Of a stretch of 64,000 nt of DNA, positions 12,202 to 50,729 are shown piece after piece. The stretch is from Saccostrea echinata (taxonomy: Eukaryota): NCBI RefSeq assembly GCF_033153115.1, contig NW_026889766.1, forward strand, positions 5,518,001 through 5,582,000, read 5' to 3'. Position 1 is the stretch's first letter; the number at the start of each line of letters is the position of its first letter. A program made the position numbers and the translations under genes. The notes under the pieces were generated by a model. The model was not told where the DNA came from, ran no database searches, and saw only the letters and a list, made by a program, of their open reading frames with translations.

Positions 12202-14240
12202 TAGCGCGTTAGAGTGTTTAGTGGTTTGCAGCTTATCTAGGCCAAAATCTGAATTCTGGTAAACAGGATGTGCGCGTTTTCTTGTTGCTGATTTTCAAAC
12301 AAGATTTTTGCATCATATAAGCCAGAAGAATTAGCGCTGGATTATTAACACCTGCTTTGTGAGTATAATTTCATCAGAGATTTCAAAAGATAATTTTTAA
12401 ACATGTTTAAAGTGACTTTTTTGTTACCAGTACATCATTGTATTTTAGTATGCATATGTGTAGCAAAAACAAAGCTATTATGTATTTGAATTGAATACTT
12501 TAGGCAACAACAAATGTACCTCCTTGTCTTATGTTGATCATAACTCAAAATATCTAAGTGTTGAAACATGAAACCATATTGCAGTTAGATGACAGTTCCA
12601 TCAACAGACATGAATTTCATTCGAACTGATTACATATTTCCTGACATACACCCTAAAATATGTCTATTCCATGTTCTTGCAGAATATCAAAACCAACGGT
12701 ATTAAGACCTATGTTAAAATACTCATTTTCACCTTCCCCCTTACCAACAATGACAATTTTGAAGCAGTTTTCCTCACCGAAACACTGTTCGGCCTTTTTT
12801 CTGGAAAGCGCTCTCCTTGGCTGACCGCTGGTGGACAGTTACCACTCGTCCTCCTGTCGAGTTGTTCTTGCGTTCCTCCTGGAACAGTGCAGTGATCTTC
12901 ACACAAACCTCATCCTGAACATAGTGCTGCATCTACAGATATAGAATAGACAACATATATTATTACAAATCAAGAACCCTTTTGAGCATGTACAAATACA
13001 GAGAGTGATAGTCTTATTTTACAATCCTAATGTATGTTAGTGAAACGAGTAAATGTTATTCACGTTTATTTATGACAACTAGCAACTTTTTTGATTAAGG
13101 TAATCTACAATTTGATTTTATTAATTATCAATTTGGTCTCTGACCAGTAGAGCTAAAACAGCAACATTTATCTAATTTAGACATTTTTTAATAAGATTTT
13201 TCAATATGATAAAATTCAAAATAAATTATATATCAGTTACCTTTCTTTTAAACACATTGTATAAATCAATTTAAGATTTTTTTTAAAATGATAAATATCC
13301 TTTATTTTGAGAACTACATGAATGTATAAATGTTTCTTTTTTTTAATACCAAAGGTGTAGATTGAAAAATTATCTGAAAGGCTTATACATTGACAGCTAT
13401 TTAAATCACATGACCTGGATTTAAATCACGAACTGGATATAAATCATATGACCTGGCAAACCAACGTAACGAAGTAGATTATCAGACAGTATTTAGAAAG
13501 CCATATTGATACTACAGGGAATTCGCAGACATTAACTCAATTTTAATATATATCACTTTTTTGCTAGTAAATATCCTCTACCTGAATTAAAAACAAACAT
13601 TTTGAAAAGTCCAAATCCTTCAACAATAAGGAGCGATAATATAATTATGCATGAATATACTGTACATGTGTTAAGAGTTCCAGCACAGGGATTTGAGATC
13701 ACATTTAATTTGTATCTATTACCCCATCAATGATAATTTTCCGATAAAATTCTGGCTTTAGATTGGTTGAGGTCTGTCACGTGAAGCCAGTGTAATACTT
13801 ATATACGGTCACTTGAAAATATTATATACATGATCGTGGTCAATACAGAGTTATCTTTTCTTTTGTTACACTTAGAATAACTCTACTTTCTTAGCTTTTT
13901 AAATTGTTAATAGACAACAGGCTTGCTGATTAATAAACACAAACCCCAGTTAAAGGTGAACTTTTATTTAAAACAAGCTAGCTCTCACAAATATTAACTA
14001 TTCTCCTTGTTTAATTTTCTTCACATTGTCAAGTACTTTCAATGATTTTCATCCTTGATAATTTTGTTTTACATGTCAATCACTTATTATCATGATAATT
14101 TAATATATATTCTTACTTAAAAATATTTTCATTTTTTTTTATTTATTTATATTGTCATTTTGGTTTGCACAAAGCATAAAAAAAAACAAAATTCTCAACA
14201 AAGAATTTATCCTTAACAATTTTGTATTAATTTTTTACAG

Positions 14241-15783
14241 CATCATCGTAACCTGGTCATTGACCCCCTGGACAGAGTTCAAGTACTGTGACCTGTGTCA
14301 AATAGCTGCATTAAATAGTCGCTGTGAACTTTGTCACGTTAACCTACGTAAGGCTTGTGTAAGGAGCATCTCTTTGATTCTTTCAAAAAACACAAGGTTG
14401 TACCTAACAAGCACAGAAAATCTGCTCCTAACTATCGAAAATGTCCAAACCATACCCAGAACCACTGTGAATTTTGCTGTGAGAAATGTGACATTCCTAT
14501 CTGTTCTATCTGCATCTTTTCTGATAACCATCATTGGCATGAATTTATAGATGTTCTGAAAAAGGATTTAGAAAAAGACTTGGAAGAACTAGAGAAAGAA
14601 TTTATCCTGCATATGAAGAAATTACCTTTGATTTAAAGTCTGAAAAAGTAAACTTTCAAATACATTATGAGAAAGTGACAACAGCTGTCACGAAACAAAG
14701 AAAAGACTGGCTCAAAGAAATTAACATCACTGTCACCAAACAGAAATCTCAAATTGATGAGATAAAAAAAGACACCTAGCTGTTCTAAAAATAATAACAG
14801 GAAAAGAAATTAAACAGAATACTACGGATGTAAAACAGAGTATTCTTGATCTGAAGAAAATTCTGGACTCCAATGATGTCTCCCTTACCTCTGCATACAA
14901 ATCCAGGAATGCTGAATTCAGAACTTTACCTCCTAAAGTCAATGTTTCATTAGCTTTATCTTGTCCCCCAGTCAAACCACTGCTTGATAAACCAGAGCTC
15001 GTCACCACCTTAAACACTGGGTATAAATATCTACGCAGCGTTACCTGTATCAGTGATGAAGAAATCTGGACAAGTGGACAAGACAACATCATGAAACTCT
15101 ACAACCTCCAGGATGAACAACTGAAGTCAATCCAAACTAAGTTAGGATACATACCACAGGACATAGCAGTGACAAGGAGTGGACATACAGTTTATACTGA
15201 CCCTGATACAAGACCTGTAAACATAGCAAAGAATAAACAGATATAGAAAGTGATCAGACTACAGGGATGGAAACCTTGTCATGTCTGCAGTACCTCCTCT
15301 GGTGACCTCCTGGTTAGCATGGTTAGTGATGATAAACAATCAAAGGTTTTCCGTTACTCTGGCTCCATAGAAAAACAAACCATTCAGTTTGATACTGAAG
15401 GTAAACCTCTGTATTCATCTGGTTACAGTAGATACATCAGTGAGAACAAGAACCTGGAAATCTTTGCAGCTGACAATGGAGTCAGTGCTGTAGTGGTGGT
15501 TAATCAGGCAGGAAAACTCCGATTTAGATACAATGACCATACCTCTACTACCAAGGGATCTTTTAATTCACTTTGCATCACAACAGACAGACAGAGTCAG
15601 ATCCTGACATCAGACCGCGACAACCACTGTATCCACATACTAGCTCAGGATGGACAGTTCCTTCGTTACATTGATAACTGTGAGGTATACAAACCATGGG
15701 GTTTATGTGTAGACACAGAGACAACCTCAATCTGGCTGAATTTTACAGTGGTAAAGAGAATTTAGGAAGTCAAATACATGTAA
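14241..15783 (+). pseudogene. TRIM-like B-box/CC/NHL copy 2, pseudogene
   Basis: Collinear with copy 3, but the start codon region is deleted, there are several frameshifts, a deletion near 14951, an in-frame TAG near 15244, and the upstream leader-exon donor reads GG instead of GT (13518). Confidence 0.9.
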
Positions 15784-17049
15784 ACACTTCATTGTCGTTG
15801 AGAGTCTATGTGACTGATATGCAATATGAAAAAAAACCCATTACATTGATTATGTGAACATGTACGGATATGTGCAAACGAAAGTGTTTGGACAGTGGGA
15901 AAATACATTTTAAAACCTAATGTTATTCTGTTTCTATTTCAAGAAATACTCTACTTACATTATAAATATTGATTTCTGATTAAACATCATATTATGCAGT
16001 GAATGTTCCAGCTATCAATAATTAACAAGAATTCTCTGATGAGACTGAAGCTCTACTGATATGTACTTATAATTAAGAAAGATGTATTTTGGTAGTCTAC
16101 ATTTGAAAAAAAAAACCTAATCAGCTCAATTAAGTATTAAGCATTATTAAAAGTGGACCAAAGTTGTAGGAGAAGAGTCATTTTGAATGGATTTCAAGGA
16201 AAAATTCTATTTTTAGTATCCAGATAACACCACATGTTACAAACAAAACCAATTTGCATAATGATGTTTCTTAATCTAGTCTACTTGTGTTCTAAGTCTT
16301 ATTAACATTATACATAAACTGTAAAAGAGATAGTGTTTTGAAAGAATTTCAAGGAAATATCTATTTAGAGAAGCCTTGCAATACTGTTTGTCAAAATCAA
16401 AAACTGATACATGGAATTAAGTATCTTAATGTAGTCTGCTTTTCCATGTTTTACTTGAATTAGATTAAAACTGTAGGAGGAGTAGCATTTTGAAAGTTAA
16501 ATGACTAAATTTTCAAACTTCAATTCTTGTAGGAGAAAAAATTATTGGGCCTAGTTTTTCATGGAAATGAGTGGCCACTAGTTCCCCTGTGGCGTTGTTC
16601 TTCCTCCTGGAACAGTGCAGTGATCTTCACACAAACCTCATCCTGAACAATATGCTGCATCTACAGAGTAGAATAGACAAGATATATTATTCTAAATCAG
16701 GGTCCTTTTGGGCATATACAAATACAGAGAGTGATACTATTATTATATATGTCTTACATTATTCTGGTCTCTGACCAGTAGAGCTAAAGACAGCAACTTT
16801 TATCTAATTTAGAATTTTTAAATCAGATTTCTGATAAAATTCAAGATAAATGATATATATATTTTTTTAACACTTTTATTACCTTTCTTACACATTGCAG
16901 AAATCAATTTATGATTTTAATGATTAGATCAATACATCTAGAACATCCTCTATGATGAGAATATCCTGAATGTATAAATCTATCAGTGTTTTACTTAAAT
17001 ACCAAAGTTGCAAGATGAAAAATTATTTAAAAGGCCTATATATTGAAAG

Positions 17050-17132
17050 GTATTTAAATCACATGGCCTGGCAAAAGAACACCAGGAAGTAGATTGTCAG
17101 GCAGCATTTAGGAAGCCTTATTTATACTACAG
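17050..17132 (+). promoter_or_regulatory. Putative core promoter and non-coding leader exon of the TRIM-like gene
   Basis: TATTTAAATCACATG followed by a ~65-nt block ending TACAG|GTAA. The block recurs upstream of copies at 13455-13517, 17870-17935 and 33390-33457, and each coding exon begins at a polypyrimidine-AG acceptor. Confidence 0.55.
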
Positions 17133-18915
17133 GTAAAACTTTTTTTTTCAATTTTAATATATTACACCTTTTTGCTACTAAATATTCTGTACCTGAATTA
17201 AAAACAAAAAATTGTGAAAAGTGGAAATCTTTCAAAAATAAGGAGCAATATAATTATGCATAGTTTTTTTTTTTTTGTATGTGTGTAAGTCTCAGCATGG
17301 GGATTTGAGATCACATTTGTATCTATTACCACACCACTGATGATTTTTTTATGAAATTCTGGCTTTAGATTGGTTGAAGTCTGTCAAATGAAGGCAATCT
17401 CATACTTAAACACGGTCACTTGAAAATATTATATACATGGTGGTATTCATTACAGAGTTATCTTTCCTTTTGTTACACTTAGAATAACTCTTAGTCTTTT
17501 TTTTTTAAATTTTATTAGACAATAGGCTTGCTGATAAATAAACACAAACCCCAGTTAAAGGTGAACTTTATTTAAAATAGGACAGCTATCAAAGATATTA
17601 AGTATTCTCCTTGTTTAATTTTCTTCACATTGTCAAGTACTCTCAATTTTTTTCATCCATGATAATTTTGTTTTACTCGTCAATTAGTTATTATCATGAT
17701 AATTATATATATATATTTAACTACAAAATATTAAACTTTTACTTTTTTATTAATATTGTCATTTTAGTTTGCACAAAGCATAAAAAATAAAATTCTCAAC
17801 AAAGAATTTATATTTCACAATTTTTTTGTAAACAGTATCATCGTTACCTGTCATATGAGAAGACTATTATGGCAAGTCAACACCAGGAAGAAGATTGCCA
17901 GAAAGTATTTATAGGAAGCCATATTGAAACTACAGGTAAGACATTTTTTTTCAAATTGGAAAATATCCCATTTTTGCTACGAAATATCCTCTACTTGAAT
18001 TAAAAACAAAAAATTGTGAAAAGTGGAAATCCTTCAAAAATAAAGAGCAATATAATTATGCATGATTATATTTTACGTGTACATGCCAAGACTATGATGG
18101 TCTCAGCATGGGGTTTTGAAATCACATTTGTATGTATTACCCCATCTCAGGTGATTTTTTGATAAAGACCTGGCTTAAAATTGATTCAAGTTTGCCACGG
18201 TAAGGCAGTGTAATACCTATACACGGTCGCTTGAAAATATGATATACTTGGTTGCGGTCATTACAGAGTTATCTTTTCTTTTTTCACACTTAGAATATCT
18301 CGAGTTTCGTAGGTTTTTTTTCTTAATTTTAATTGTTATAATAGTCAAGAGGCTTACTGAGTGTCTATTGACGAATTAAAAGTAAACTTATGTCAGCAAC
18401 AATCACAAATTATGAAAACATTTTCTCCTAATACTAAAATAAGTTATTACTTCATGAAACACAAAAAACAATGTAATATATACCACAACATGACATCAAA
18501 ACAGGCACTGTATTGGAGAAGTAAAACATATACCGAAAAGAAACAATTAATTTATTCATATGCCCTGACAGGGCATATTAAAAAAACTTAACGTAAAAAA
18601 AAAAAATACGTAAACTCAAACCCATGTTAAAAGTGAACTTATTTAAAACAAGACAGTTCTCGCAAAATTTATTATTAACAATTTCATTTGTTTCTTTCGC
18701 TCAATGATTTTTATCCTTGATGATTTTTTTTTTCACATATTAAGCTCTTCTTACCATGATTATACATATTTCATACTACAAAATATTTCACTTTTACCTA
18801 TCTATTAATATTTTTATTTCAGTTTGCATAAAATAAAATCCTTAACACAGGAATTTTTGCGTTACAATTTTAAATATTTTGCAGCATCACCTAGACTTGG
18901 TCATATGAGAACACT

Positions 18916-20574
18916 ATGATGGATCCCCTGAACAGAGCTCAAGTACTACTCCTCTGCGACTTGTGTCAAAGAGAGGCAGTACAAAGTCATTGTGAACTTT
19001 GTCATATCAACCTGTGTAAAGCCTGTGTAGGGGAGCATCTCTCTGATTTATCCCAAAGACACAAAGTTGTACAATACAAAGACAGAACTTCTACTCCTAA
19101 ATACCCGGAATGTCCAATCCATTCAAAGAAACATTGTGAACTTTACTGTGAGAAATGTGACATTCCTGTCTGTTCTACCTGCATCTCCTCTGATAAACAC
19201 CATGGGCATAAATTTACAGACATCCTGAAAAAAATAAGTTCCAAGAAAAAAGATCTAGAAAAAGACTTGGAAGAACTCGAGAAAAGAATCTATCCTGCAT
19301 ATAGAGAAATTACATTAGATCTAAACTTTCAAAAAGCAAACACTGAAAAACATTATGAGAAACTGACAAATGCTGTCACCAAACAAGGAGAAGACTGGCA
19401 CAGAGAAATTAACATCATTGTCAAGAAAAGGAAATTTGAAATTGATGAGATGAAAACTAAAGGCCTGGTTGCTCTAAATAAACAGGAAAATGAAATAAAA
19501 AAAATTACTTCTGATGTAAAAAAGAGTATTCTTGATCTGAAGAACATTCTTGACTCAAGTGATATCTCCCTAACTTCTGATTACAAATCCAGGAATGCTC
19601 AATTCAGAAGTTTACCTCCTAAAGTCACTGTTTCATTACCAAGTTTCTCTCCTCATCAGATCAACAGAGAACAACTCAATCAAATGTTTGGTTCTCTGTC
19701 AGCATTATCCATTACAAATGAAAAGCATGGCTACACAATGAACACACTAGAAGCGGTATCCTGTCCTCTAGTCAAACCACTGCTTGATGAACCAGAGCTC
19801 ATCACCACCATAGACACTGGTTATAAATACAGTGTTACCTGCCTCAGTGATGAAGAAATCTGGACATGTGGATATGACAAAACTATGGAACTCTACAACC
19901 TCCAGGGTAAACTACTGAAGTCAATCCAAACCAAGTCAGGGAAGATAACACGTGACATAGCAGTGACAAAAAGTGGTGATCTAGTTTATACCGACTCTGA
20001 TACTAGAACTGTAAACATAGTGAAGAATAAACAGATACAGGAAGTGTTCAGACTACAGGGGTGGAAACCTTACAATGTCTGTAGTACCTCTTCGGGTGAC
20101 CTCTTGGTTACCATGGACAGTGATGATAAACAATCAAAGGTTGCCAGATACTCTGGCTCCACAGAGAAACAAACCATTCAGTTTGATAGTGAAGGTAAAA
20201 CTCTCTATTCATCTGGTTACTGTAAATACATCAGTGAGAACAAGAACCTGGATATTTGTGTAGCTGATTGGGGAGCCAGTGCAGTAGTGGTAGTTAATCA
20301 GGCAGGAAAACTCCGATTTAGATACACTGGTCATCCCTCTACTACCAAGGGATCGTTTGATCCCCTCGGCATCACAACAAACATAAAGGGTCAGATCCTG
20401 ACTGCAGACCGTAACAACCACTGTATTCACATCCTAGATCAGGATGGACAGTTTGTCTGTTACATTGATAACTGTGATCTACATCTTCCATGTGGTTTAT
20501 GTGTAGACACCAGAGACAACCTCTTTGTGACTGAGATGAGCAGGGGTAAAGTAAAGAAAATCAAATACATGTAA
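18916..20574 (+). CDS. TRIM-like protein copy 3, intact 552 aa: B-box1, B-box2, coiled coil, NHL beta-propeller; no RING
   Basis: [21 protein letters not shown] (B-box1), [24 protein letters not shown] (B-box2), a heptad-rich helix and six NHL-like repeats. Single coding exon preceded by acceptor ttttgcag at 18884; AATAAA near 20745. Confidence 0.93.
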   Translation: MMDPLNRAQVLLLCDLCQREAVQSHCELCHINLCKACVGEHLSDLSQRHKVVQYKDRTSTPKYPECPIHSKKHCELYCEKCDIPVCSTCISSDKHHGHKFTDILKKISSKKKDLEKDLEELEKRIYPAYREITLDLNFQKANTEKHYEKLTNAVTKQGEDWHREINIIVKKRKFEIDEMKTKGLVALNKQENEIKKITSDVKKSILDLKNILDSSDISLTSDYKSRNAQFRSLPPKVTVSLPSFSPHQINREQLNQMFGSLSALSITNEKHGYTMNTLEAVSCPLVKPLLDEPELITTIDTGYKYSVTCLSDEEIWTCGYDKTMELYNLQGKLLKSIQTKSGKITRDIAVTKSGDLVYTDSDTRTVNIVKNKQIQEVFRLQGWKPYNVCSTSSGDLLVTMDSDDKQSKVARYSGSTEKQTIQFDSEGKTLYSSGYCKYISENKNLDICVADWGASAVVVVNQAGKLRFRYTGHPSTTKGSFDPLGITTNIKGQILTADRNNHCIHILDQDGQFVCYIDNCDLHLPCGLCVDTRDNLFVTEMSRGKVKKIKYM

Positions 20575-21024
20575 CTACTTCATTGAAAAACAAAGACAAG
20601 ACATTAATTATGTGAACATTTAAAAATTAATGTAATCAGCAGTGTATGAACAGTGGGTAAATACATTTTAAGACCTCATGTTATTCTGTTTATATTATAA
20701 AATAATCCTCTATTTACTTTATAATAACCGGTATTTATTTTTTAAATAAATATCATAATGTAGCAAATGTAAAACTTCATACTGAATCAGACGAAAAGAA
20801 ATGCAAAAACACGAAATAAAAATTGGTTTGTACAAGGTTAGTTTATAATGAGAAAGAATGCCATGGACCTAAACAATGGAAATTAGAACAATATAAATTC
20901 CTTTAGTCAATATTTCAAACTTTTGTTGATAGGTTTATGTTCCAATCATCAAATATCTTTCACCAGAATTCTCTGACAAGACTGAAGCTCTACTGATATG
21001 TACTAATAATTAAGAAAGATGTAT

Positions 21025-22650
21025 GAAATATATGTAGATAACGAACAGTATTCAATCTCAAAAGTCCATTAAACATTACAAAATAGGAGCAGAGCAAACA
21101 CGGACCTCCAAAACATCAGAGGTGGGATCAGGTGCCATGGAGGAGTGAGCATCCTTTGCCGACCGGTCACACCCGCCGTTTGCTCCTTGTCATCATCGGG
21201 AAATAATTCAGTGTGTAAATAATGGCCTAACAATTAGTATGAAAAACTTCAGTCAACATTTGACTCAATGATAAATTATATCATTTGCTGACTAGGTCAT
21301 TGTATCGACCATAGAACTTACGAAATGATGACTTTAAACGAGACTGCTGATATTCTTGTTTCATCAACTTGTTTGTCAATAATTAACCTTGTTTTAGAAA
21401 TTGTACATACGTAAAGCATGCTCTTGCGTATCGAATCAACTGAGAGATATAAACCCCGTATGCAGGTGATGAAGGTATATTGCTGCATAAGTAAGGGAAG
21501 TTGACGATTGAAAAGTTAAAGTCATCACGTTTATCATAAAGCTTGGTTATTAGATTAACATTAACGTCTTTTTCAAGTAAAATATCCAAATATGAAACAG
21601 ATGTGTCAGACTCTGTGGTATCTTTTATCTCAAGCTCACCAGGATATATCGTATCGACATAAGAATGGAAATAACCATTGTTAATTGACAATACGTCGTC
21701 GATATATCTAAATGTCGAGTTGAAGCCCAGAGCAAGTATTTTCTTCTTTTCAGGTCTATATTTTGGACAAATTCTGCTTCATATGAATACAAAAAAAGGT
21801 CTGCTAATAACGAGGCGCAATTGGTACCCAGGGAATTCCAATAGATTGTTGGAAGACCTGGTCTCCAAAAACCACATAGATATTGTCAATCAGAAACTCA
21901 AGCATCTGTTTAATGTCAACTTCAGAGTACTTGTGTGTACAATCAAAATGTTTTTTTAACAAAATAATTTTGCAAATGACCAATGACAAGGTAAGTAAAT
22001 TTACGAGTTCCATTTTTATTGAAAAAGCAGCTGTCAATGATATCAAAAAGCCTGGACTTTAATTTATCGTGGGGAATGGTTGTGAATAAAGTTGAAAAGT
22101 CGTAAGTTTTTAGCTGTTGATTTTGGTAAATTCTTGTGATTTCAAAATTTCCAAAAGTTCCTTGGAATTTTTAAGTATCCACATCAGATTTACACCAAAT
22201 ATTGAAAATATTGTTGCACAGTACTCTTGAAGTTTTCCCTTCACTACTGTTAATATCTTAGTGAGGACTAAAGAAAGAGGCTTGGTTGAGCATTTACTGG
22301 AACATGCTATGTACCTTTGTTTGTAAGGATTTTCATGAAGTTTCGGAATCCAATATAAATATGGCAATTCAAATTCATTTTGGTTGTTTGGAATATTAAA
22401 ATATTCAAAAATGACATATGATTTTGAAGAATTTCTTCCTTTGAAAGGGAACTATGAGTATAAGTTGGATTACCACTTGTAGAATTAAATCCAAGTTCCT
22501 CTTAAACACATTTAGTATAATGAGCCTTACAAACAAAGACAATGTTATTACCTGCTAAATGTCAGCAGGGACCAGTACGTACGGACATGTAATCTATCTA
22601 ATTCTTTTTTCACTTCAGGATTACTGAATACAGAAGGATAGATGGTAAAA
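21025..22650 (-). mobile_element. Penelope-like retroelement remnant (reverse transcriptase, frameshifted)
   Basis: Motifs YLYWIPKLH..PYKQRYI, YDFSTL.TTIPH, QQSIGIP, FRYIDD, LYDKRDDFNFSIVNFP..SNIP..PAYGVYISQL.RY. It interrupts a TRIM 3' flank that is continuous in copies 2 and 4. Confidence 0.82.
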
Positions 22651-24960: not shown

Positions 24961-25044
24961 AGTTTGGTTGAAATTGGCAGACTGGTTCTTGAGAAGAAGT
25001 CGAAAATGTTAAAAGTTTACAGACAGACAGACAACTAGACGGAC

Positions 25045-31802: not shown

Positions 31803-32045
31803 GCTGCATCTACAAATACAGACAGTGATAATCTTATTGTGCTGCATCTACAAATACACACAGTGATAGTCGTATTGTTCTGCATCTACAAACTCAGATA
31901 GTGATAATCTTACTGTGCTGCATCTACAAACACAGACAGAGATACATTTTTGTGCTGCATCTACAAATATAGACAGTGATACTTTTTTTGAGCTGCATCT
32001 ACAAATATAGACAGTGATATTCTTATTTTACTGCATCTACAAATT
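31803..32045. repeat. 7 x 37-38 bp minisatellite spanning a Sin3 pseudo-exon splice acceptor
   Basis: (G/T/A)CTGCATCTACAAA at 31803, 31841, 31879, 31917, 31954, 31992 and 32030. Confidence 0.92.
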
Positions 32046-36271: not shown

Positions 36272-37930
36272 ATGGACCCCCTGGACAGAGCTCAAGTACT
36301 CCTCCTCTGTGACATGTGTCAAAGAGAGGCAGTACAGAGTCATTGTGAACTTTGTCACATTAATCTGTGTAAGGTCTGTGTTGGGGAGCATCTCTCCGAT
36401 TCATCCCAAAGACACAAGGTTGTACACTACAAGCAAAGAAAATCTGCTTCAAACTACCCAGAATGTCCAAACCACACCCAGAACCACTGCGAACATTACT
36501 GTGAGAAATGTGACATTCCTGTTTGTTCTACGTGCATCTCCTCTGATAAACATCAATGGCATACATTTACAGATATTCTGAAAAAACTAACTTCTAAGAA
36601 AAGAGATTTAAAAGAAGACTTGAAAGAACTAAAGAAACAAATCTATCCTGCATATGAAAAAATTACATCGGATTTAAACTCTAAAAAATTAAACGTCGAA
36701 AAACATTATAAGAAACTGACTACAGCTGTCACCAAACATGGAGAAGACTGGCACAGAGAAATTAACATCATTGTCAACAAACAGAAATCTGAAATTGATA
36801 AGATGAAAACTAAACACCTGGCTATTCTAAATAAACAGGAATAGGAAATTAAAAAGATTACGTCTGAAGTAAAACGGAGTATTCTTGATCTGAACAAAAT
36901 ACTACACTCAAATGATGTCTTCCTAACCTCTGCATACATATCCAGGAATGCTGAATTCAAAAGATTACCTCCTAAAGTCAATGATTCATTACTACGTTTT
37001 TTCCCCTATCAGATCAACACATATCAACTACATCAAATGTTTGGTTCTTTGTCAGCATTATCCATAACAACAGAAGAACATGGCTACACGATGGAGACAC
37101 CAGAAGCTGTATCCTGTCCTCCAGTCAAACCACTCATTGATTTACCAGAGCTCATCAGCACCATAAAAACGGGATATAATGTATATAGTGTTACCTGTCT
37201 CAATGATGAAGAAATATGGACATGTGGACATGACAAAATCATGAAACTCTACAGAAAGGGAAAAATACTGATGTCAATCCAAACCAAGTCAGGGAACAAT
37301 CCATATGACATAGCAGTGTCAAGTAGTGGAGATCTAGTTTATACTGATCCTGGTACAAGAACTGTAAACATAGTGAAGAATAAAAAGATACAGGAAGTGT
37401 TCAGACTACAGGGGTGGAAACCTTACAATGTCTGTAGTACCTCCTCTGGTGACCTCTTGGTTACCATGGACAGTGATGATAAACACTCAAAGGTTGTCCG
37501 ATACTCTGGCTCCATAGAGAAACAAACCATTCAGTTTGATAGTGAAGGTAAACCTCTCTATTCATCTGGTTATTATAAATACATCAGTGAGAACAGGAAC
37601 CTGGATATATGTGTGGCTGACAATGAAGGCAAAGCAGTAGTGGTGGTAAATCAGACAGGTAATTTCCGATTTAGATACACTGATCATCCCTCTACTACCA
37701 AGGGCTCATTTGATCCAATCGGCATCACAACAGACAGCCAGAGCCAGATCCTGACAGCAGAGCGTTACAAAACCCGTATCCACATCCTAGATCAGGACGG
37801 ACAGTTCCTCCATTACGTTGATAACAATTATGATCTACAGTTTCCATACGGTTTATGTATAGACACAAGAGATAACCTCTTTGTGGCTGAGTGGAGCAGT
37901 GGTAAAGTGAAGAAACTCAAATATATGTAA
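36272..37930 (+). CDS. TRIM-like copy 4: full-length frame interrupted by a single TAG (36842-36844); B-box/CC ORF 36272-36844 and NHL ORF 37037-37930
   Basis: Both ORFs are in the same frame and the 64 codons between them contain no other stop. Total span is 1659 nt, the same as copy 3. May be a young pseudogene or a split gene. Confidence 0.75.
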
Positions 37931-39371
37931 ATTCCCCAATGTTATGGAAAGTTTCTGTGACTGAAACACAAGGAAAAAAAGCACTATTACATTGATTATG
38001 TAAACATGTAAAAATTTATGCTAACAAAAGTGTATGAACAGTGCTTACAATGTAAATACATTTTAAGACCTAATGTTATCCTGTTTTTATTATTTAAAAA
38101 AGTACTCTATTTACTTGATAATTACTAATTCCTGAATAAACATGATTATGTAGTGAATGCAAAACATCTTACTGAATCACATAAAATATATATATCGGCC
38201 TAAATACAAAACAAAGATTGCTTTGAACAAGGGTAGTTTATGATGAGAAAGTATGCCATGGACCTAAACAATGGGAAATAGAACTATATAAATTCTGTTA
38301 CAGTCAATATTTCAAACCTTTGTTGATAGTGGTGTTCCAATCAATAATAATAATTCATCAGAATTCTCTGACGAGACTGAAGCTCTACCGGTAAGTACTT
38401 ATAATAAAGTAAGATGTATTTAAGTAGTCTACTTGTTTAAAAAAAAAACAGATCAGGTCTAAACATTAGGAGGAGTAGTATTTACAAAAGAATTTTTATA
38501 AAATATATCTTTTAGTAACCATGGCAACGCCTTATACTTCATTATCAAGAAAAAAACAAACAAAACTTAGAATTATATATCTTAGTGCAGTACCAAGTAT
38601 TATTTAAACTTAACAAAAACTGTATGAGCATTAACGTTTTGAAAGAATTTCAAAATTTCCATTTTTAGTATCCAGAAAACACCGTGTGCTGAAATCAAAA
38701 TTAATTTCTATAATTATGTTTCTTTATGAAGTCTTTTTTTTAATAACCTTTCAATACCCTTTGTCAAAATCAAAAACTGATGGAATAATGTATCTTAATG
38801 TAGTCTATGTAGATAATTTTTGTAAAAAGTCTTATTAAAATTGGAATCAAACTGTAGGAGGAGTAGCATTTTGAAAATCAAAATTTCAAACTGCAATTCT
38901 TTTAGAAGAAAAAAAAATTGTCGGGATTGGCTATTCATTGTAATGAAAAAGTAAATAAATTATATATGTTAACTGACTCAGGTTTGTAAGTTAAAACCAT
39001 CATTTCCTTACCTGTCTGACAAGATTCTGTACCAGTGTCTCCATAGTGAAGGCCATATAGGCATGGATACCATACATCTCTCTTAGCTGGTCCTCATACA
39101 GTGTGGATTCCAGGTTCCCCTCGGCATATTCTACTGTAATTACTGGTAAGAGTTAAAGTAAAACTTGTTTAATCCGGATAATGTTTTCCAAAAAATTTAT
39201 TTATTACAATATAAATTTTAGATCCCTTTTTTGTTAGGTCATTGATGAAAGTATTGTCGAATCCGGAATATTGTCTAATGCAGCCAATTTTTGTGGAATC
39301 AGGGGTGTCTAGATTAGACAAGTTTCACTGTATGTCTGGAACACTGAGATATCCATGCAAAGTGAATCCTG

Positions 39372-40406
39372 TACGCAGCACAGTTAAGGTGCCAAATGGA
39401 AATATAGACGAATTTTTTAGATAGAAAATACATTCTTTACAAGGATGGGCATTTCTTTTTAGGACTTTACTATTATCGGACAAATGTAATGTGGTTGAAA
39501 ACTGAATGTTGAGGACGATTAGATTTCTTATTAAGACTTGTCACGTGATGTGGCAGTCACGTGATTTTAGCAAATATACTTGAAAAATTGAGGTCATCTA
39601 CAAATTCTAATATTGCAAGGGCATAACCAAGTTAAAAATCTAAGTTTAACATATAATTATTTTTAACACTCTCTGTAGTTTTTGAAAATTGCTGCGAACC
39701 TATATAGATTCTACTATCTAATTGCTAGAATTACATTTGTTAGACCGTATGTTGAATATTTTGCTGGTCAAGTACATTAAATATAGATATAATTAATTCA
39801 TTTGCAAGATTTCAGCAGGTTCGCAGCACTTTTCAAATATCTTCACACTTCTTGAGTTTATGTGTAAAAGCTTGTCATAATTCATTGAGGGTATGCCCTT
39901 GCAATATATCGATTTATTACGACCCTTCTATTACCCTTCAATGAATCTGCATACAAATATACGACAGTATCGCTTGTCTAGGGAATGTACGGGAAGTATA
40001 TGAATAAAATCATAAAACAGACATCGCATCCAAGTTAATGGCCTCTTATATATCTACAATTTATATTTTATTTAATTACAAAATACATTTTTCATTGCAT
40101 AAATATAACTTGATCCGCCTCTCACTGCATACAAACTGCGTCAAATTTTCCGATATGACGTCACATTGACAAGTGCATTGCGATCAGTGAATTGTTTATA
40201 TATTGCTGTGTGGGATTTAACCAACGACAATAATGCATGCGCTAGTTAGTATTGATGTAGTTTAAAGGTATTCATAAGTTTAAAATAGCAAATCATTTCA
40301 TTTTGTGGTAATTTGAAGAACTTATATTTTTGTGTGATGTCATAGTAAGCATTTCCCGGATAAATTAGGCCCCGCCTCCTTACTGCAGCCTTAACTTTGC
40401 TGCGTA
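39372..40406. mobile_element. ~1 kb TIR element
   Basis: TACGCAGCACAGTTAAGG at the left end versus the reverse complement of CCTTAACTTTGCTGCGTA at the right. Absent from the paralogous site at ~26565. Confidence 0.75.
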
Positions 40407-40602
40407 ACCATATACTAAATTTCAATATTTTGAATCTGAAAAACTTCCCGTTCTTAAGATTTGATTGAAGTATATTATACTAATGTCCTCAAAGTTACCT
40501 ACTTACTTGGAGCTTTGAGTCTGAGGGCCAATGCAGTGGATTCCATTTGGTCTTTTCTACACTGTGCCTCCTCTGCCGCGATTTTAACAGAATATGTGTA
40601 TA

Positions 40603-40777
40603 CAGTTGAATTTCGGTATTTCGAACACGGATATCTCGAATACCATGGATATGTCGAAGTGATTTGGAAGTCCTAACCACGGATTTCCTAAGTATTTTAT
40701 CCTTAATATCTCGTACCCTTGGATATCTCGAAGTTTTTTCTCGATACTATGGAGTTCGATATAACGAGGTTTCACTG
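40603..40777. mobile_element. Tc1/mariner-pogo-type MITE inserted in a Sin3 pseudo-exon
   Basis: Imperfect TIRs CAGTTGAATTTCGGTATTTCGAAC...GTTCGATATAACGAGGTTTCACTG with a TA duplication. The intact exon at ~55895 reads TGTGTATATCTTG with no insert. Confidence 0.88.
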
Positions 40778-40977
40778 TATCTTTATAAAGTCGTTCACAC
40801 AGAATTTGATAAAAACATGTACAAGTTATTGTTGACAAAGAACGGGGATTAAACATATTTTCATACTACAAAATATTTCTACTTTACCTACTTATTAATA
40901 TTGTTATTTTAGTTTCCGCAAAGCATAAAAAATAAAATCCTTAACATTGGACTTCAATTTTTGTTTATTTTTTACAG

Positions 40978-42697
40978 TATAATCTAGACTATATTGGATC
41001 CCCGTTACAGTGCCCAAGACATCCTTTTCTTTGACCTGTGTCAAAAAACTGCATTACAGAGTTATTGTGAACTTTGTCAGATTAACCTGTGTAAGGCCTA
41101 TATAGGGTAGCATCTCTCTGATTCATCCAAAAGAAACAAGATTGTACCATAGAAACACAGAACTTTTGTTTCTAACTACCCAGAATGTCCAAGTCATTCC
41201 AAGAAACATTGTGAACTTTACCGTGAGAAATTTGACATTCCTGTCTGTTCTACCCGCATCTCCTCTGATAAATATCATGGTTTTAAAATTATAGATGTTC
41301 TGAAAAAACTTACTTCCACAAAAAAGGATTTAGAAAAAGACTTGGAAGAACTGGAGAAAAGAAATTTTCCTGCACATGAAGAAATTACATAACATTTAAA
41401 CTCCGAAAAAGTAAACTTTGAAAAACATTATTAGAAACTGACAACAGCTGTTACCAAAGAAGGAGAAAAATGGCACAGAGAAATTAACATCATTGTAAAT
41501 AAACAAAAATCTGAAATTGATGAGATGAAAAAAAAGACACCTGGTTGTTCTAAATAATCAGGGTAAAGAAACTAACATCAACTGTCACTTAACAAGGAGA
41601 AGACTGGCACATTGAAATTAACATCATTGTCAACAAACAGAAATCTGAAATTGATAAGATGAAAAATAAACACTTGTCTGTTCTAAATAAACAGGAAAAA
41701 GAAATTAAAGAGATTACGTCTGAAGTAAAACGGAGTATTCTTAATCTGAAGAAAATACTGGACTCCAATGATGTCTCCCTAACCTCTGCTTACAAATCCA
41801 AGAATGCTGAATTCAGAAGTCCCCCCCCCCCATAAAGTCAATGTTTCATTACCAAGTTTCTCTTCTCATCAAATCAACAAAGAACAGCTTCATTGAATGC
41901 ATGGTTCTCTGTCAGCATTATCCATTACAACAGAAAAACATCGCTACACAAAAAAGACACCAGAATCTGTATCCTGTCCTCCAATCAAACCACTAATTGA
42001 TGAACCATAGCTCGTCAACACCATAGATACGGGGTATAATCTATACAGTGTTACCTGTCTCAGTGATGAAGAAATCTGGGCACGTGGAATTGACAAAATC
42101 ATGAAACTCTACATCCTTCAGGGCAAACTACTGAAGTCAATCCAAACCAAGTCAGGGAACATAGCAGATGACATAGCAGTGACAACGAGCGGAGATCAAG
42201 TTTATACTGACCCTAATACAAGAACTGTAAACATAATGAAGAATAGACAGATACAGGAATTGATCAGACTACAGGGCTGGAAACCTTACAATATCTGTAT
42301 TACCTCCTCTGATGATCTCCTGGTTACCATAGACAGTGATGATAAACAATTAAAGGTGGTTCGTTACTCTGGATCCACAGGGAAGCAAACCCTTCAGTTT
42401 AATCATGAAGGTAAACCTCTGTATCATCTGGTTATATTAAACGCAGTGAGAACCGGAACCTGAATATATGTGTGGCTGACCTAGGAACCAGTGCAATAGT
42501 GGTGATGATTAATCAGAAAGGAAAACTCAGATTTAGATACACTAGTCATCCCTCTACTACCAAGGAAACATTTGATCTAGTCGGCATCATAACAGACAGC
42601 CAAAGTCAGATCCTGACATCAGACCGTAACAACAACTGTATCCACATCCTAGATCAGGACGGACAGTCTTCCGTTCCATTGATAACTGTGATCTACA
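40978..42697 (+). pseudogene. TRIM-like copy 5, pseudogene, 3' truncated
   Basis: No ATG at the homologous start, multiple stops and frameshifts, an internal duplication of ~130 bp of coiled-coil sequence (~41440-41570 and ~41580-41710), and truncation after GATCTACA where it joins the intron of copy 6. Confidence 0.9.
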
Positions 42698-43050
42698 CAC
42701 ATTTGTATCTAGAACCCAACTGATGATTTTTTATGAAATTCTGGCTTAAGTTTGGTTAAAGTCTGTCACGTGGAGGCATGTGTATACGGTCACTTGAAAA
42801 TCAAAAAATGCTCACGGTCAATTCATAGTTGTCTCATCTTTTGTAACACTTAGAACAACTCAAGTTCCTTAGTTTTCCACTTGTTATTAGACAAGAGGCT
42901 TGCCGAGTTTCTGTTGATAATTATCTGTTGACAAATACAAAGTTAACAAACGTCACGCATAAAAATAAAATCCTCAAAAAAGAAATTAAACTTGACAATT
43001 TTTAATTTTTGCACAGTATCATCTAAACTTGGTCATGTGAGTAGACTATT

Positions 43051-44718
43051 ATGGACCCCTTGGACAGAGCTCAAGTACTCCTCCTCTGTGACCTGTGTCA
43101 TTTTAAGAGCTGTATTACAGAATCATTGTGAACTTTGTCAGATTAATCTGCGTAAGACCTGTGTTGGGGAGTATCTCTCTGATTCACCCAAAAGACACAA
43201 GGTTGTACCCTACAAGCACAAAAAATCTGCTCCTAACAACCCAGAATATCCAAACCACACCCAGAATCACTGCAAACATTACTGTGAAAAATGTGATATT
43301 CCTGTTTGTTCTACGTGCATCTTCTCTGATAAACATCATGGGCATAAATTTACAAATGTTCTGAAAAAATAATTTCTAAGAAAAAAGATTTAGAAGAAGA
43401 CTTGGAAGAACTAGAAAAACGAATCTATCCTGCATATGAAGAAATTACGTTGGATTTAAACTCTGAAAAGTAAACTTCGAAAAACATTATGAGAAACTGA
43501 CTACAGCTGTCACTAAACAAGGAGAAGACTGGCACAGAGAAATTAACATTATTGTCAACAAACAAAAATCTGAAATTGATGAGATGAAAACGAAACAACT
43601 GACTGTTCTAAATAAACAGGAAAAAGAAACTGAAAAGACTACTTATGATGTAAAACAGATCATTCTTAATCTGAAGAAAATATTGGACTCCAATGATTTC
43701 TCCCTAACCTCTGCTTACAAATCCAGGAATGATGAATTCAGAAGTTTAACTCCTGAAGTCAATGTTTCGTTACCAAGTTTCTCTCCTCGTCAGATCAACA
43801 GCGAACAGCTCCATGAAATGTTTGGTTCTCTATCAGCATTATCCATAACAGAAGAAAATCATGGCTACACAATAAAGACACCACAAGCTGTATCATTCCT
43901 GCAGTCAAACCACTGCTTGATGAACCAGAGTTCATCACCACCATAAATACTGGGTATGATCTGATCAGTGTTGCCTGTCTCAGTGTTGAAGAAATCGGGA
44001 CACGTGGAATTGACAAAATCATGAAACGCTACGACCTCCAGGGTAAACTACTGAAGTCAATCCAAACCAAGTCAGGGAATATACCATCTGACATGGCAGT
44101 GACAAGAAATGGAGATTTAGTTTATACTGACCCTGATACAAGAACTGTAAACATAGTGAAGAATAAAAGATACATGGAGTCATCAGACTACAAGGGTGGA
44201 AACCTTACAATGTCTTTAGTACCTCCTCTGATGACCTCCTGGTTACCATGGTCAGTGATAATGATAATCAATCAAAAAGTTGTCCGTTATTCTGGCTCCA
44301 CAGAGAAACAAGCCATTCAGATTGATGGTGAAGGTAAACCTCTGTATTCATCTGGATATATCAAATACATCAGTGAGAACAGAAATCTAGAAATCTGTGT
44401 GGCTGACAATCGAGTCAATGCAGCAGTGGTGGTTAATCAAGCAGGAAACTCACAGATTTAGATACACTGGTCATCTCTCTACTCACAAGGGAGCGTTCAG
44501 ACTAGTCGGCATCACAACGGACAGTCAAGGTCTGATCCTGACAGCAGACAGTAACAACCACTGTATATATCTACATCCTAGATCAGGATAGACAGTTCCT
44601 CCGTTACATCCATAACTGTGATATACAGTATCCATGTGGTTTATGTGTAGATACCAGAGAGTACCTCTTTGTGGCTGAATGGGTCAGTGGTAAAGTGAAG
44701 AAAATCAAATATATGTAA
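43051..44718 (+). pseudogene. TRIM-like copy 6, frameshifted pseudogene
   Basis: Runs from ATGGACCCC to ATATATGTAA and is full length, but is broken over several ORFs (42992, 43584, 44021, 44397) by frameshifts. It lacks the upstream leader exon. Confidence 0.9.
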
Positions 44719-45389
44719 ATAATTCATTGTCACTGAAAGTTTCAACAGTTTATGAACAGTGGGTTATTACATTTCAAGACCTAATGTTGTTGAACTGTTT
44801 ATACTGAAAAAAATCTTTAAGTAGTCTACTTGTGTACAAAGTCTGTCTAAAATTGTACAAAAACTGTGGGAGATGTAGCATTTTTAAATAATTTTAATGA
44901 AAATGTCTGACAAGGTTCTGTAATAGCTTCTCCATGGTGAAGGCGATGTAGGCATGGATACCATACATCTATCTTAGCTGGTCCTCGAATTGTGTAGATT
45001 AGAGGTTCCCGTTCAGCAAACTCAAAATCAAAATAATAAACCATCATACAAGAAGTTTAGTTGAAACGTAATCATATATCAAACATTTCACTTGATATAT
45101 TCTGCAGTTTTACACCTTTGTGCAGCATTAAAAATCTTTAAATGTGTATGAGGAAGTTTGTGTCCTTCAATGTTTCTCTTTCCCTTCTCGTGTTTGCAAA
45201 GTATTAAGGACTCATGGAACCCTAAGACTGTTTATTTGAAAACTTAAACCCCATTCAACCCCTCTTCACACACAGTCACTCATCCCTAACCTCTTTATGG
45301 ATATTCTCTGAAGAACGTCAGATGACCCGCCCTAGTACTGCTTCCAGGAAACGAATAGTGGCCAAGTTTGTCTCTACGATGAATGAGGG

Positions 45390-50676: not shown

Positions 50677-50729
50677 AAATAACACTAAGCTATTTTCAGA
50701 AGAATGGCTTAAAATGAAAGTACAAAAGA

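What the first reader, a model, noticed from the sequence alone, without database searches (positions are those of the whole stretch)
12749..45022. TRIM-like genes nested antisense in one specific Sin3 intron and amplified together with decaying Sin3 copies
Seen: the order [Sin3 MQH exon] - [TRIM gene, opposite strand] - [Sin3 ..VRQ exon] - [Sin3 DD.YS exon] occurs at 12749/16575-TRIM2/3-23362-26680 and at 31626-TRIM4-39012-40507, and TRIM5/6 are again followed by a VRQ remnant at 44904. The intron flanks on both sides match the real intron 54059-54656, which is only ~600 bp and has no TRIM gene. Inference: a TRIM-like gene entered (or was retained in) this intron of a Sin3 duplicate, and a unit running from the PAH2 exon to the 3'UTR was tandemly expanded. 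The Sin3 host decayed while the passenger was kept, so fragments of a housekeeping gene serve as the scaffold for expanding a candidate immune family next to the live gene.
Basis: partly seen in the sequence, partly recalled or inferred. Interest (0 to 1): 0.82.

Follow-up and report, generated by a model that had tools for sequence, protein, structure and literature searches.

The report
TRIM-like genes amplified inside Sin3 pseudogenes
Next to a working Sin3 gene lies a long, old tandem array of broken partial Sin3 copies, each carrying a B-box/NHL "TRIM-like" gene on the opposite strand in the same intron; this is an ordinary by-product of segmental duplication, and about half of the TRIM-like copies are dead too.

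Summary
The order MQH pseudo-exon, TRIM-like gene on the opposite strand, VRQ pseudo-exon (then DD.YS) recurs in the window and twice more within 200 kb upstream. It also occurs on a second contig (C63). All copies share the same intron breakpoints, about 54169 and 54513. A head-to-tail junction (Sin3 3' flank joined to the intron before the PAH2 exon) recurs at seven or more places, so one founder unit was amplified.

The live intron (598 bp) has no trace of the TRIM block. At least 270 of its 343 unmatched bp are a high-copy dispersed repeat.

- Of 11 array TRIM copies, 5 are intact, 1 has a single stop and 5 are broken. In the window only T3 and T1 are intact.
- Host and passenger trees are both star-like. 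This is compatible with co-amplification but has little power.
- Neighbouring copies T5 and T6 are not sisters, and the 3' parts of some units exchanged with the live gene. The array therefore grew by repeated unequal exchange.
- Whether the TRIM gene entered a duplicate or was lost from the live gene could not be settled, because no outgroup was reachable.
- T3 is transcribed, with a spliced 5'UTR.

I found no evidence that the Sin3 fragments act as anything more than hitch-hikers.

The parts
52268..62533 (-). Live Sin3 gene. The part in the window runs from about residue 483 of a full-length Sin3 to the stop codon. Exons lie at 61660-61752, 61118-61336, 60577-60840, 60063-60230, 59693-59872, 59115-59369, 58609-58710, 57786-57995, 57131-57292, 56739-56846, 56153-56479, 55793-56065, 54657-54875, 53783-54058, 53464-53661, 52790-53035 and 52268-52552. 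The 5' exons, including PAH2, lie beyond 64000.
   Evidence: Open frames; Pfam PAH, Sin3_corepress and Sin3a_C; colinear tblastn against the 1362-aa Sin3 P0138.
54059..54656 (-). Live intron between the VRQ and MQH exons: 598 bp, with no TRIM block. The left flank 54059-54169 and right flank 54513-54656 are shared with the copies.
54170..54437 (.). High-copy dispersed repeat inside the live intron. It makes up at least 270 of the 343 bp that the copies lack. Its left edge coincides with the left homology breakpoint.
   Evidence: Genome searches: 1274 and 527 first-look candidates, copies 81-87% identical, edges at query positions 111-112 and 99.
49203..49968 (.). Unit junction J next to the live gene: the Sin3 3' flank (from 49968 upward) is joined to the intron/PAH2 exon of the next unit (49669 downward). 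It is interrupted here by a young repeat at 49670-49967.
   Evidence: The same junction without the repeat lies at 27433/27443, at four upstream units and twice on C63.
44903..49669 (-). Sin3 pseudo-unit C: PAH2 exon 49156-49344, linker 48605-48781, PAH3 remnant 47081-47455, HID remnant 45078-45379, VRQ remnant 44903-45043.
43048..44718 (+). TRIM6, a pseudogene with many frameshifts. Its sister is TRIM4.
40995..42697 (+). TRIM5, a pseudogene with an internal duplication and a truncated 3' end. Its sister is the copy at -12524.
27433..40872 (-). Sin3 pseudo-unit B: DD.YS 40474-40872, VRQ plus flank 38885-39132, MQH 31619-31838 with left flank 32031-32155, then 31096-31292, 30440-30692, last exon 29677-29961 and 3' flank 27433-29676.
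36272..37930 (+). TRIM4, full length but with one in-frame TAG.
9446..27443 (-). Sin3 pseudo-unit A': PAH2 26978-27443 abutting DD.YS 26659-26970, VRQ plus flank 23228-23559, MQH 12640-12937 with left flank 13004-13115, and 3' flank 9446-11112.
17852..20815 (+). TRIM3 transcription unit: 5'UTR exon at least 17852-17935, GT..AG intron 17936-18884, coding exon with ORF 18916-20574 (552 aa, intact), and AATAAA signals at 20745 and 20815.
   Evidence: ORF; Pfam; a 218-nt contig of run X2 joins 17852-17932 to 18882-19018 with one mismatch; splice sites.
21019..22646 (-). Young retroelement, 93-94% identical to many copies and 5'-truncated, inserted downstream of TRIM3. It is not part of the ancestral unit.
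   Evidence: ORFs on the minus strand.
16505..16698 (.). Illegitimate junction at 16570: the right intron flank (54515-54580) abuts a partial MQH exon plus left flank (53963-54095). This is where the TRIM2 nest and the TRIM3 nest were joined. It is unique within the 264 kb examined.
14259..15783 (+). TRIM2, a pseudogene with frameshifts and an internal deletion.
1026..6463 (-). Sin3 pseudo-unit A: PAH2 6111-6463, linker 5265-5603, PAH3 3770-4860, HID remnant 1026-1272.
1..905 (+). 3' part of TRIM1. The ORF runs from 1001 bp before the window to 669 and is intact. A decayed MQH remnant lies about 3 kb upstream of it.

Best explanation
This is an old tandem segmental-duplication array lying 3' of a live Sin3 gene.

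SHOWN
- The repeated unit is a 3' portion of Sin3. It runs from the intron before the PAH2 exon to about 2.3 kb past the stop codon, and units are joined head to tail at one recurring junction.
- The founder unit carried a complete RING-less B-box/NHL (TRIM-like) transcription unit on the opposite strand. It sat in the intron between the exons ending ..VRQ and starting MQH...
- That TRIM unit has a 5'UTR exon, a 0.95-kb intron and a single coding exon.
- Every later unit inherited the nest at the same breakpoints.

INFERRED
- The array, at least 290 kb on this contig, then grew and was reshuffled by repeated unequal crossing-over or gene conversion between units, and in their 3' parts with the live gene. 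Deletions and transposon insertions were added on top.
- The Sin3 pieces have no promoter and no 5' exons, and they decay as unprocessed pseudogenes.
- The TRIM-like genes follow birth-and-death evolution. About half are dead. The intact ones are under moderate purifying selection (dN/dS 0.35-0.55), and at least TRIM3 is transcribed.
- The TRIM unit arrived by DNA-level duplication from the large TRIM-NHL family, whose closest relatives lie on contig C13. It most probably landed in the redundant Sin3 duplicate (about 0.6-0.65) rather than in the live gene.
- The Sin3 fragments are hitch-hikers that also supply homology for further unequal exchange. They are not a functional scaffold.
For: - Domain identity of the pieces.
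- The nest recurs with shared breakpoints at about 54169 and 54513-54522 in all units, in the window and up to 189 kb upstream.
- Units at -174.7k and -84k kept the MQH exon, the left flank and TRIM-block remnants but lost the ORF.
- Junction J (49968|49669) recurs at 27433/27443, -21.9k, -104.8k, -166.5k and -179.1k, and twice on C63.
- Sin3 pseudo-exons are spread from C17:5284712 to the live gene.
- Array TRIM copies form one cluster in the ML tree (58/94), star-like with end branches of about 0.09. The host trees are star-like too. TRIM dS of about 0.3 is of the same order as neutral host divergence of 0.16-0.25.
- T5+T6 as sisters is rejected; T5 pairs with -12k and T6 with T4.
- The live gene's 3' flank is nested among the copies (100/99). 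Divergence from the live gene rises from 0.06-0.09 in the 3' flank to about 0.2 at the nest in those units. This fits chimeric or converted 3' parts and a single deep split at the nest.
- 33 of the 43 aligned pseudo-exon pieces carry stops or frameshifts.
- TRIM ORF status.
- The spliced RNA-type contig and its GT..AG sites.
- The C13 paralogue shares the ORF, 147 bp upstream, 317 bp downstream and the duplicated pre-ATG segment about 1.05 kb upstream. That is the same exon-intron layout, so the move was DNA-based and not retroposition.
- The live intron has no TRIM remnant, and its unmatched middle is mostly a dispersed repeat.
Against: - The direction of the event (entry into a duplicate versus loss from the live gene) is not shown. 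On the copies alone, one gain and one loss are equally parsimonious, and there is almost no stem branch uniting the copies.
- The TRIM block in the copies and the dispersed repeat in the live intron sit at the same spot, within about 10 bp on the left side. That is an unexplained coincidence under two independent insertions.
- Monophyly of the array TRIMs has weak bootstrap support (58). Array copies are no closer to each other at synonymous sites than to the C13 clade.
- Differences shared by several pseudo-exons are strongly biased to the third codon position (20/14/81, against 0.12 per column in non-coding DNA). I attribute this to exchange with the constrained live gene, but a period of coding constraint on the copies is not excluded.
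- No long reads were available to check the assembly.
- The RNA evidence is one low-depth contig from a run whose RNA status is a guess.
Confidence: 0.75

Rival explanations
1. Retention and loss. The TRIM-like gene was already nested in the VRQ|MQH intron of the ancestral, functional Sin3 gene. The duplications copied it, and the live gene later lost the whole block.
For: - It needs the same number of events as a gain (one loss).
- There is virtually no stem branch shared by all copies.
- The live gene's 3' flank groups inside the copies.
- The live intron has foreign sequence (a dispersed repeat) exactly where the block sits in the copies. That could mark a rearranged site.
Against: - No remnant of the 4-8 kb block is found in the live intron, even with sensitive settings.
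- The close relationship of some units to the live gene is confined to the 3' flank and fades to about 0.2 at the nest. No unit therefore shows a recent split from a TRIM-bearing live gene.
- TRIM divergence from its C13 relatives (dS 0.22-0.30) is about as old as the first Sin3 duplication, not older.
- An antisense transcription unit in a roughly 255-bp intron of an essential single-copy gene is more likely to be tolerated in a redundant copy (inference).
Confidence: 0.3
2. Independent insertions. TRIM-like genes entered the same intron of different Sin3 copies several times, for example through a preferred target.
For: - Array TRIM monophyly is only weakly supported (58/94).
- dS between array copies is as large as dS to the C13 copies.
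Against: - The left and right breakpoints are identical in all units.
- All units share an array-specific upstream block (about 0.8-2.3 kb) and downstream block found nowhere else in the genome except C63.
- Block remnants persist in the units that lost the ORF.
Confidence: 0.02
3. Assembly artefact. The array is an over-expansion or mis-join of haplotypes or repeats.
For: - No long-read check was possible.
- Public runs held only 5-6% of the sampled words.
- C63 carries a 100% identical copy of the live-gene segment but different array units.
Against: - The units differ by 10-30%, and each has its own deletions and transposon insertions. Collapsed or duplicated haplotypes would not look like this.
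- There are no N runs in the 264 kb.
- An independent contig (C63) shows the same nest and the same junction J.
Confidence: 0.03
4. Functional coupling. The Sin3-derived pieces are kept because they do something: as truncated Sin3 proteins for a time, as antisense or small-RNA sources against Sin3, or as regulatory context for the TRIM genes.
For: Differences shared among pseudo-exons are depleted at codon positions 1 and 2 (0.03-0.04 per column, against 0.12 in non-coding DNA and 0.16 at position 3). Copy-specific differences are near neutral.
Against: - The same pattern follows from exchange with the constrained live gene, which searches show for the 3' parts.
- All copies lack the 5' exons, and most aligned pieces carry stops or frameshifts.
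- The TRIM3 transcript evidence starts more than 1.1 kb from the MQH fragment, and its poly(A) signals lie about 2.4 kb before the VRQ pseudo-exon. Overlap is therefore unlikely.
Confidence: 0.06

Closest known systems
Nested (intronic, opposite-strand) genes, for example OMG/EVI2A/EVI2B in an NF1 intron and the many Drosophila cases (own knowledge; general background in PMC3192792)
   Same: A complete transcription unit lies inside one intron of a larger gene on the opposite strand.
   Different: Here every host that carries the nest is a truncated pseudogene. The functional host gene lacks the nested gene. The nest is multiplied many times.
Tandem segmental-duplication arrays with co-duplicated partial genes (unprocessed pseudogene fragments; primate 'core duplicons') that evolve by non-allelic homologous recombination (own knowledge)
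   Same: - One head-to-tail junction is inherited by all units.
- Partial copies of a neighbouring gene are carried along.
- Units are reshuffled by unequal exchange and conversion.
- The two contigs differ in unit content.
   Different: - This is a mollusc genome.
- The unit couples a housekeeping co-repressor fragment with a member of a very large TRIM-NHL-like family.
- The copies are old (10-30% diverged).
Birth-and-death expansion of TRIM families (fish finTRIM/btr, primate TRIM5/6/22/34 cluster) and expanded TRIM-annotated genes in oysters implicated in antiviral response (PMC9437489)
   Same: There are many tandem paralogues, a mix of intact genes and pseudogenes, and a moderately elevated dN/dS.
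   Different: The proteins here have no RING and end in an NHL propeller rather than B30.2/SPRY. An immune role was not tested here.
Other RING-less TRIM-NHL arrays noted by this scan in the same genome, including one about 309 kb upstream whose unit is said to carry the 3' end of a neighbouring gene (s1-806646, unchecked)
   Same: It is the same gene family, on the same contig. It shows the same idea of a duplication unit dragging a piece of a neighbouring gene.
   Different: That note names a different co-duplicated gene and a convergent rather than nested arrangement. I did not examine it.

Membership tests
TRIM (tripartite motif) proteins, NHL subclass | N-terminal RING finger | tested here: not met
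   Pfam scan of the 552-aa TRIM3 protein at E<=0.01 lists no RING family. The N-terminus is occupied by two B-box stretches.
TRIM (tripartite motif) proteins, NHL subclass | One or two B-box zinc fingers | tested here: met
   PF00643 zf-B_box, E 6.2e-10, 39.5 bits (cut-off 24.1), two stretches, the best at residues 62-102.
TRIM (tripartite motif) proteins, NHL subclass | Coiled coil after the B-boxes | not tested
   No coiled-coil predictor was run. The region of about residues 105-260 is rich in K/E/L by eye only.
TRIM (tripartite motif) proteins, NHL subclass | C-terminal NHL-repeat beta-propeller | tested here: met
   PF01436 NHL, E 2.1e-9, 37.4 bits (cut-off 20). There are also sub-threshold propeller-type hits over residues 304-549.
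Sin3 co-repressor (live gene 52268-62533 and beyond) | PAH repeats, HDAC-interaction domain and Sin3a_C in the canonical order | tested here: met
   Exon-by-exon Pfam gives PAH (33.6 bits), Sin3_corepress (21.8 bits, below the 25 cut-off for this single exon) and Sin3a_C (83, 43 and 44 bits). Sixteen exon matches are colinear with residues 483-1351 of the 1362-aa Sin3 P0138. The exons were never joined into one model.
Sin3 co-repressor (live gene 52268-62533 and beyond) | Complete, uninterrupted coding sequence | tested here: inconclusive
   All exons in the window are open and colinear. The 5' third (PAH1, PAH2) lies outside the window. No spliced model and no RNA evidence were examined.
Unprocessed (duplicated) pseudogenes | Copies keep intron sequence and exon order, are truncated, and carry disabling changes | tested here: met
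   Intron flanks and the 3' flank were copied with the exons. All copies lack the 5' exons. 33 of the 43 aligned pieces have frameshifting gaps or in-frame stops.
Nested intronic gene | The whole gene lies inside one intron of a host, with both intron ends recognisable | tested here: met
   Left flank 54059-54169 and right flank 54513-54656 bracket the TRIM block in units A', B, -14k and -188k.
Nested intronic gene | The host is a functional gene | tested here: not met
   Only pseudogene copies hold the nest. The live intron has none.
Tandem segmental duplication array (NAHR-type) | The same head-to-tail junction in successive units of one orientation | tested here: met
   Junction 49968|49669 occurs at seven or more places on C17 and C63, always in the same orientation.
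Retrogene (retroposed copy) as the origin of the nested TRIM | Loss of introns, with homology to the parent limited to the mRNA | tested here: not met
   TRIM3 keeps a spliced 5'UTR intron. The C13 paralogue shares the intron's 3' end and the duplicated pre-ATG segment about 1.05 kb upstream.

The most novel reading that the evidence does not exclude
The Sin3-derived segment acts as a mollusc counterpart of a 'core duplicon'. Its homology, renewed by exchange with the neighbouring live gene, would keep driving unequal recombination. That would give each haplotype its own repertoire of TRIM-NHL genes; C17 and C63 already differ just 3' of an identical live gene. The founding event may have been repair of a break at a transposon site in the intron using a TRIM gene as filler. 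A bolder variant is that the pseudo-exons were, or still are, expressed and feed back on Sin3.
Probability: 0.12. Interest if true: 0.6.

Novelty: new member of a known kind. Interest (0 to 1): 0.33.

Why it matters
It gives a clean, datable example of how one of the very large RING-less TRIM-NHL families of this bivalve genome grows. Growth is by segmental units that drag along pieces of whatever gene lies next to them, followed by birth-and-death.

It has two practical consequences:
- For annotation, dozens of Sin3-like exon fragments over about 290 kb should not be called genes. Only some TRIM copies in the array are coding.
- For population genomics, the two contigs that share an identical live Sin3 segment differ in array content. 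Copy-number and presence/absence variation of these candidate immune genes is therefore likely here.

It does not reveal a new mechanism.

Tried and rejected
1. Outgroup test.

2. More own-genome sequence (further upstream and C63). I worked from match tables and from the loci returned by searches instead.

3. Sequencing runs. The best holders had only 5-6% of the words. Laying four runs mostly showed short pieces of paralogues at 90-95% likeness. The useful records were one spliced contig (X2) and one 3'UTR contig (X4). No long reads were available, so the assembly stays unchecked.

4. Host versus passenger trees. The MQH and VRQ blocks are too short and the radiation is star-like, so the trees are unresolved. 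AU tests do not reject T3+(-187k) or T2+T3 (p 0.19 and 0.23). There is therefore neither demonstrated congruence nor conflict.

5. An apparent match of the live intron's middle to 1199-3616 in unit A. It looked like a TRIM-free paralogous intron. It is another copy of the dispersed repeat, and the part outside the repeat aligns spuriously.

6. Similarity between the ends of the TRIM block and the repeat in the live intron (transposon capture). None was found except a doubtful match of about 25 bp at the right edge.

7. Retroposition as the origin of the nested gene. Rejected.

8. GC-to-AT decay as the cause of the third-position excess. Rejected, because the rates are about 0.2 from all four bases at position 3.

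9. Earlier scan notes. A word search including 'Sin3' found nothing.

10. Joined Sin3 model. Exons were searched one by one by reference.

Full report
WHAT IS THERE

The window is G000:C17:5518001-5582000 of a 923-Mb assembly. It has no N runs and is 34% G+C.

On the minus strand a Sin3 gene occupies 52268 to beyond 64000.
- Its exons are open.
- Exon-by-exon Pfam scans give PAH, Sin3_corepress and Sin3a_C.
- The exons are colinear with residues 483-1351 of a 1362-aa Sin3 returned by the representative search.
All searches were by single exon.

On the plus strand there are six copies of a gene with a single coding exon. The only copy that is complete and intact inside the window is TRIM3 (18916-20574, 552 aa). 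It has two B-box stretches and an NHL propeller but no RING.

Self-BLAST and tblastn place the pieces as follows.
- Set 1: MQH at 12640-12937 with a partial second copy at 16570-16698; TRIM2 (14259-15783); TRIM3; VRQ 23228-23559; DD.YS 26659-26970.
- Set 2: MQH 31619-31838; TRIM4 (36272-37930); VRQ 38885-39132; DD.YS 40474-40872.
- Then TRIM5 (40995-42697) and TRIM6 (43048-44718), followed by a VRQ remnant at 44903-45043.

The live intron is 54059-54656, 598 bp with canonical ends. Its first 111 bp and last 144 bp align to the sequences that bracket the TRIM blocks. The homology always stops at about 54169 and resumes at 54513-54522.

THE ARRAY IS MUCH LARGER THAN THE WINDOW

Sin3 pseudo-exons are scattered from C17:5284712 to the live gene. 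They are also present on a second contig, C63. I fetched the 200 kb upstream. The same nest is found at -188960/-187227/-183358 and at -14495/-12524/-9474 in window-relative coordinates. TRIM1 has a decayed MQH remnant on its left.

Two units, at -174.7k and -84k, keep the MQH exon, the left flank and pieces of the TRIM block's upstream and downstream parts. They have lost the ORF.

The Sin3 3' flank (live coordinate 49968) is joined to the intron before the PAH2 exon (49669). This junction lies next to the live gene, at 27433/27443, at four upstream units and twice on C63. One founder unit with one nest was therefore amplified.

THE LIVE INTRON

At least 270 of the 343 bp that the copies lack (54170-54512) belong to a dispersed repeat.
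- The first-look searches gave 1274 and 527 candidates.
- Copies are 81-87% identical.
- Its left edge falls exactly at the left breakpoint, and its right edge at about 54437.

A match of this stretch to 1199-3616 in unit A is just another copy of that repeat. No remnant of the TRIM block is detectable in the live intron. The coincidence of the repeat's position with the position of the TRIM block in the copies remains unexplained.

THE NESTED GENE

A 218-nt contig from run X2 joins 17852-17932 to 18882-19018 with one mismatch. The skipped stretch is a GT..AG intron (17936-18884). TRIM3 therefore has a spliced 5'UTR exon and is transcribed. This is weak evidence: one low-depth contig from a run whose RNA status is a guess, although the splice itself argues for RNA.

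The family is very large. There were 1859 first-look candidates, and at least 79 scored matches covering most or all of the protein. Most paralogues share only the ORF.

The closest one outside the array, C13:2690671-2692840, also shares 147 bp upstream, 317 bp downstream and a duplicated pre-ATG segment about 1.05 kb upstream. That is the same exon-intron layout. The TRIM unit therefore moved as DNA, not as a retrocopy. The roughly 0.8 kb further upstream is found only in this array and on C63.

'HOST DECAYED, PASSENGER KEPT' IS ONLY HALF TRUE

- All Sin3 copies are fragmentary. 33 of the 43 aligned pseudo-exon pieces carry frameshifting gaps or in-frame stops.
- Of the 11 array TRIM copies examined, 5 are intact (T1, T3, -137k, -43k, C17:5305465). 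T4 has a single TAG. Five are broken by many frameshifts (T2, T5, T6, -12k, -187k).
- The intact copies show dN/dS of 0.35-0.55. This is moderate constraint, the same as among the C13 paralogues.

HISTORY

TRIM tree. The array copies form one cluster, but with weak bootstrap support (58/94). The radiation is star-like with end branches of about 0.09.

Host trees. Those from the MQH and VRQ blocks are equally unresolved. AU tests find no significant host-passenger conflict.

Evidence that growth was not simple local tandem duplication:
- T5 and T6, although adjacent, are rejected as sisters (p-AU 0.004). T5 pairs with the copy 50 kb upstream, and T6 pairs with T4.
- The junction at 16570 between the TRIM2 and TRIM3 nests is an illegitimate join. 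Its MQH fragment groups with units 190 kb away rather than with the MQH next door.
- In 1.6 kb of non-coding 3' flank, the live gene is nested among the copies: ((live, -19k), (-166k, B)), support 100/99.
- For those same units, divergence from the live gene climbs from 0.06-0.09 in the 3' flank to about 0.2 at the intron flanks. That is the value seen in all units.

I read this as repeated unequal crossing-over or gene conversion, which involved the live gene only in its 3' part, on top of one deep split at the nest.

This also explains why differences shared by several pseudo-exons are concentrated at third codon positions (20/14/81), while copy-specific differences are near neutral. The pattern is not GC decay. 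A past phase of coding constraint on the copies cannot be excluded.

TIMING AND DIRECTION

The following values are all of one order, which points to one burst:
- Synonymous divergence among array TRIMs: about 0.3.
- Synonymous divergence between array TRIMs and the C13 clade: 0.22-0.30.
- Neutral divergence between units: 0.16-0.25.
- Neutral divergence between the live gene and the copies at the nest: about 0.2.

Whether the TRIM unit landed in a fresh duplicate or sat in the ancestral gene and was later lost from it cannot be decided without an outgroup. I favour entry into the duplicate, at about 0.6-0.65, for three reasons:
- No remnant is left in the live intron.
- No unit shows a recent split from a TRIM-bearing live gene.
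- A redundant copy is the more permissive target for such an insertion.

SECOND CONTIG

C63 carries a 100% identical copy of the live segment 53464-56094. It also carries its own nest (MQH 320029, TRIM 321263-324338, VRQ 326233, DD.YS 326987).

It has no near-identical counterpart of TRIM6/unit C or of the live gene's 3' flank/junction. This supports the reality of the nest. It also suggests large structural differences between haplotypes or a further duplication. I could not fetch C63 to decide which.

VERDICT

This is a real and neatly reconstructible structure of an ordinary kind: a tandem segmental-duplication array in which a partial housekeeping gene and a nested member of an expanding family were copied together and then decayed by birth-and-death.

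Another note of this scan describes a TRIM-NHL array 309 kb upstream whose unit also carries a neighbouring gene's 3' end (unchecked). That suggests this is a common mode of growth in this genome.

Background from papers: TRIM-annotated genes belong to the expanded families implicated in oyster antiviral response (PMC9437489). I tested no immune function.

Noticed in passing
window 54657-54875 / 53783-54058 versus proteins P0005, P0153, P0154: In one other lineage (ENA contigs of 0.26-3.4 Mb), a single genomic ORF reads straight from the VRQ exon into the LQH/MQH exon while keeping the outer exon borders. That lineage therefore lacks this intron. Most other genomic ORF fragments (P0001-P0029) read through VRQ into an intron, so the intron is old and was lost there.
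   Followed up: partly
G000:C63:298000-437600 versus window 42957-56094: C63 holds a 100% identical copy of the live Sin3 segment. It has no near-identical copy of the sequence only 3-10 kb downstream of it (junction J, unit C, TRIM6). Its nearest TRIM copies lie about 82 kb from the gene, against 9 kb on C17. This is either a strong structural difference between haplotypes or a further duplication.
   Followed up: partly
L014 and L005 (C17:5380604-5382268 and 5474782-5476446; window-relative -137396 and -43218): Two intact TRIM copies lie exactly 94,178 bp apart and differ by only dS 0.078. They have no Sin3 pseudo-exons beside them. This looks like a much younger duplication of about 94 kb inside the array region.
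   Followed up: no
window 23739-24791: A satellite of about 160-bp period, 6.6 copies at 78-84% matches, lies in the VRQ-to-DD.YS pseudo-intron of unit A'. Related copies lie at 6528-6789.
   Followed up: no
window 49670-49967, 5618-5916, 3255-3539: A young element of about 300 bp, 93-95% identical to very many copies genome-wide, is inserted into the unit junction next to the live gene and twice in unit A. Its insertion at the junction post-dates the array.
   Followed up: no
window 21019-22646: A 5'-truncated retroelement, 93-94% identical to dozens of copies with a common 3' end and variable 5' ends, sits just downstream of TRIM3. It has minus-strand ORF fragments at 21383-22367.
   Followed up: no
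window 17069-17525 / 17870-18344 and 17534-17872 / 18606-18915: The region upstream of TRIM3 contains an internal duplication of the segment just before the ATG. The 5'UTR exon (17852-17935) starts in the upstream duplicate. The C13 paralogue has the same arrangement.
   Followed up: partly
window 54463-54516: A 13-bp inverted repeat (TAGAAATGACTCA ... TGAGTCATTTCTA) with a 28-bp loop lies between the end of the dispersed repeat and the start of the right-flank homology in the live intron.
   Followed up: no
window 55053-55401: A second dispersed repeat, with many copies at 79-87% identity on other contigs, lies in the live intron between the DD.YS and VRQ exons.
   Followed up: no
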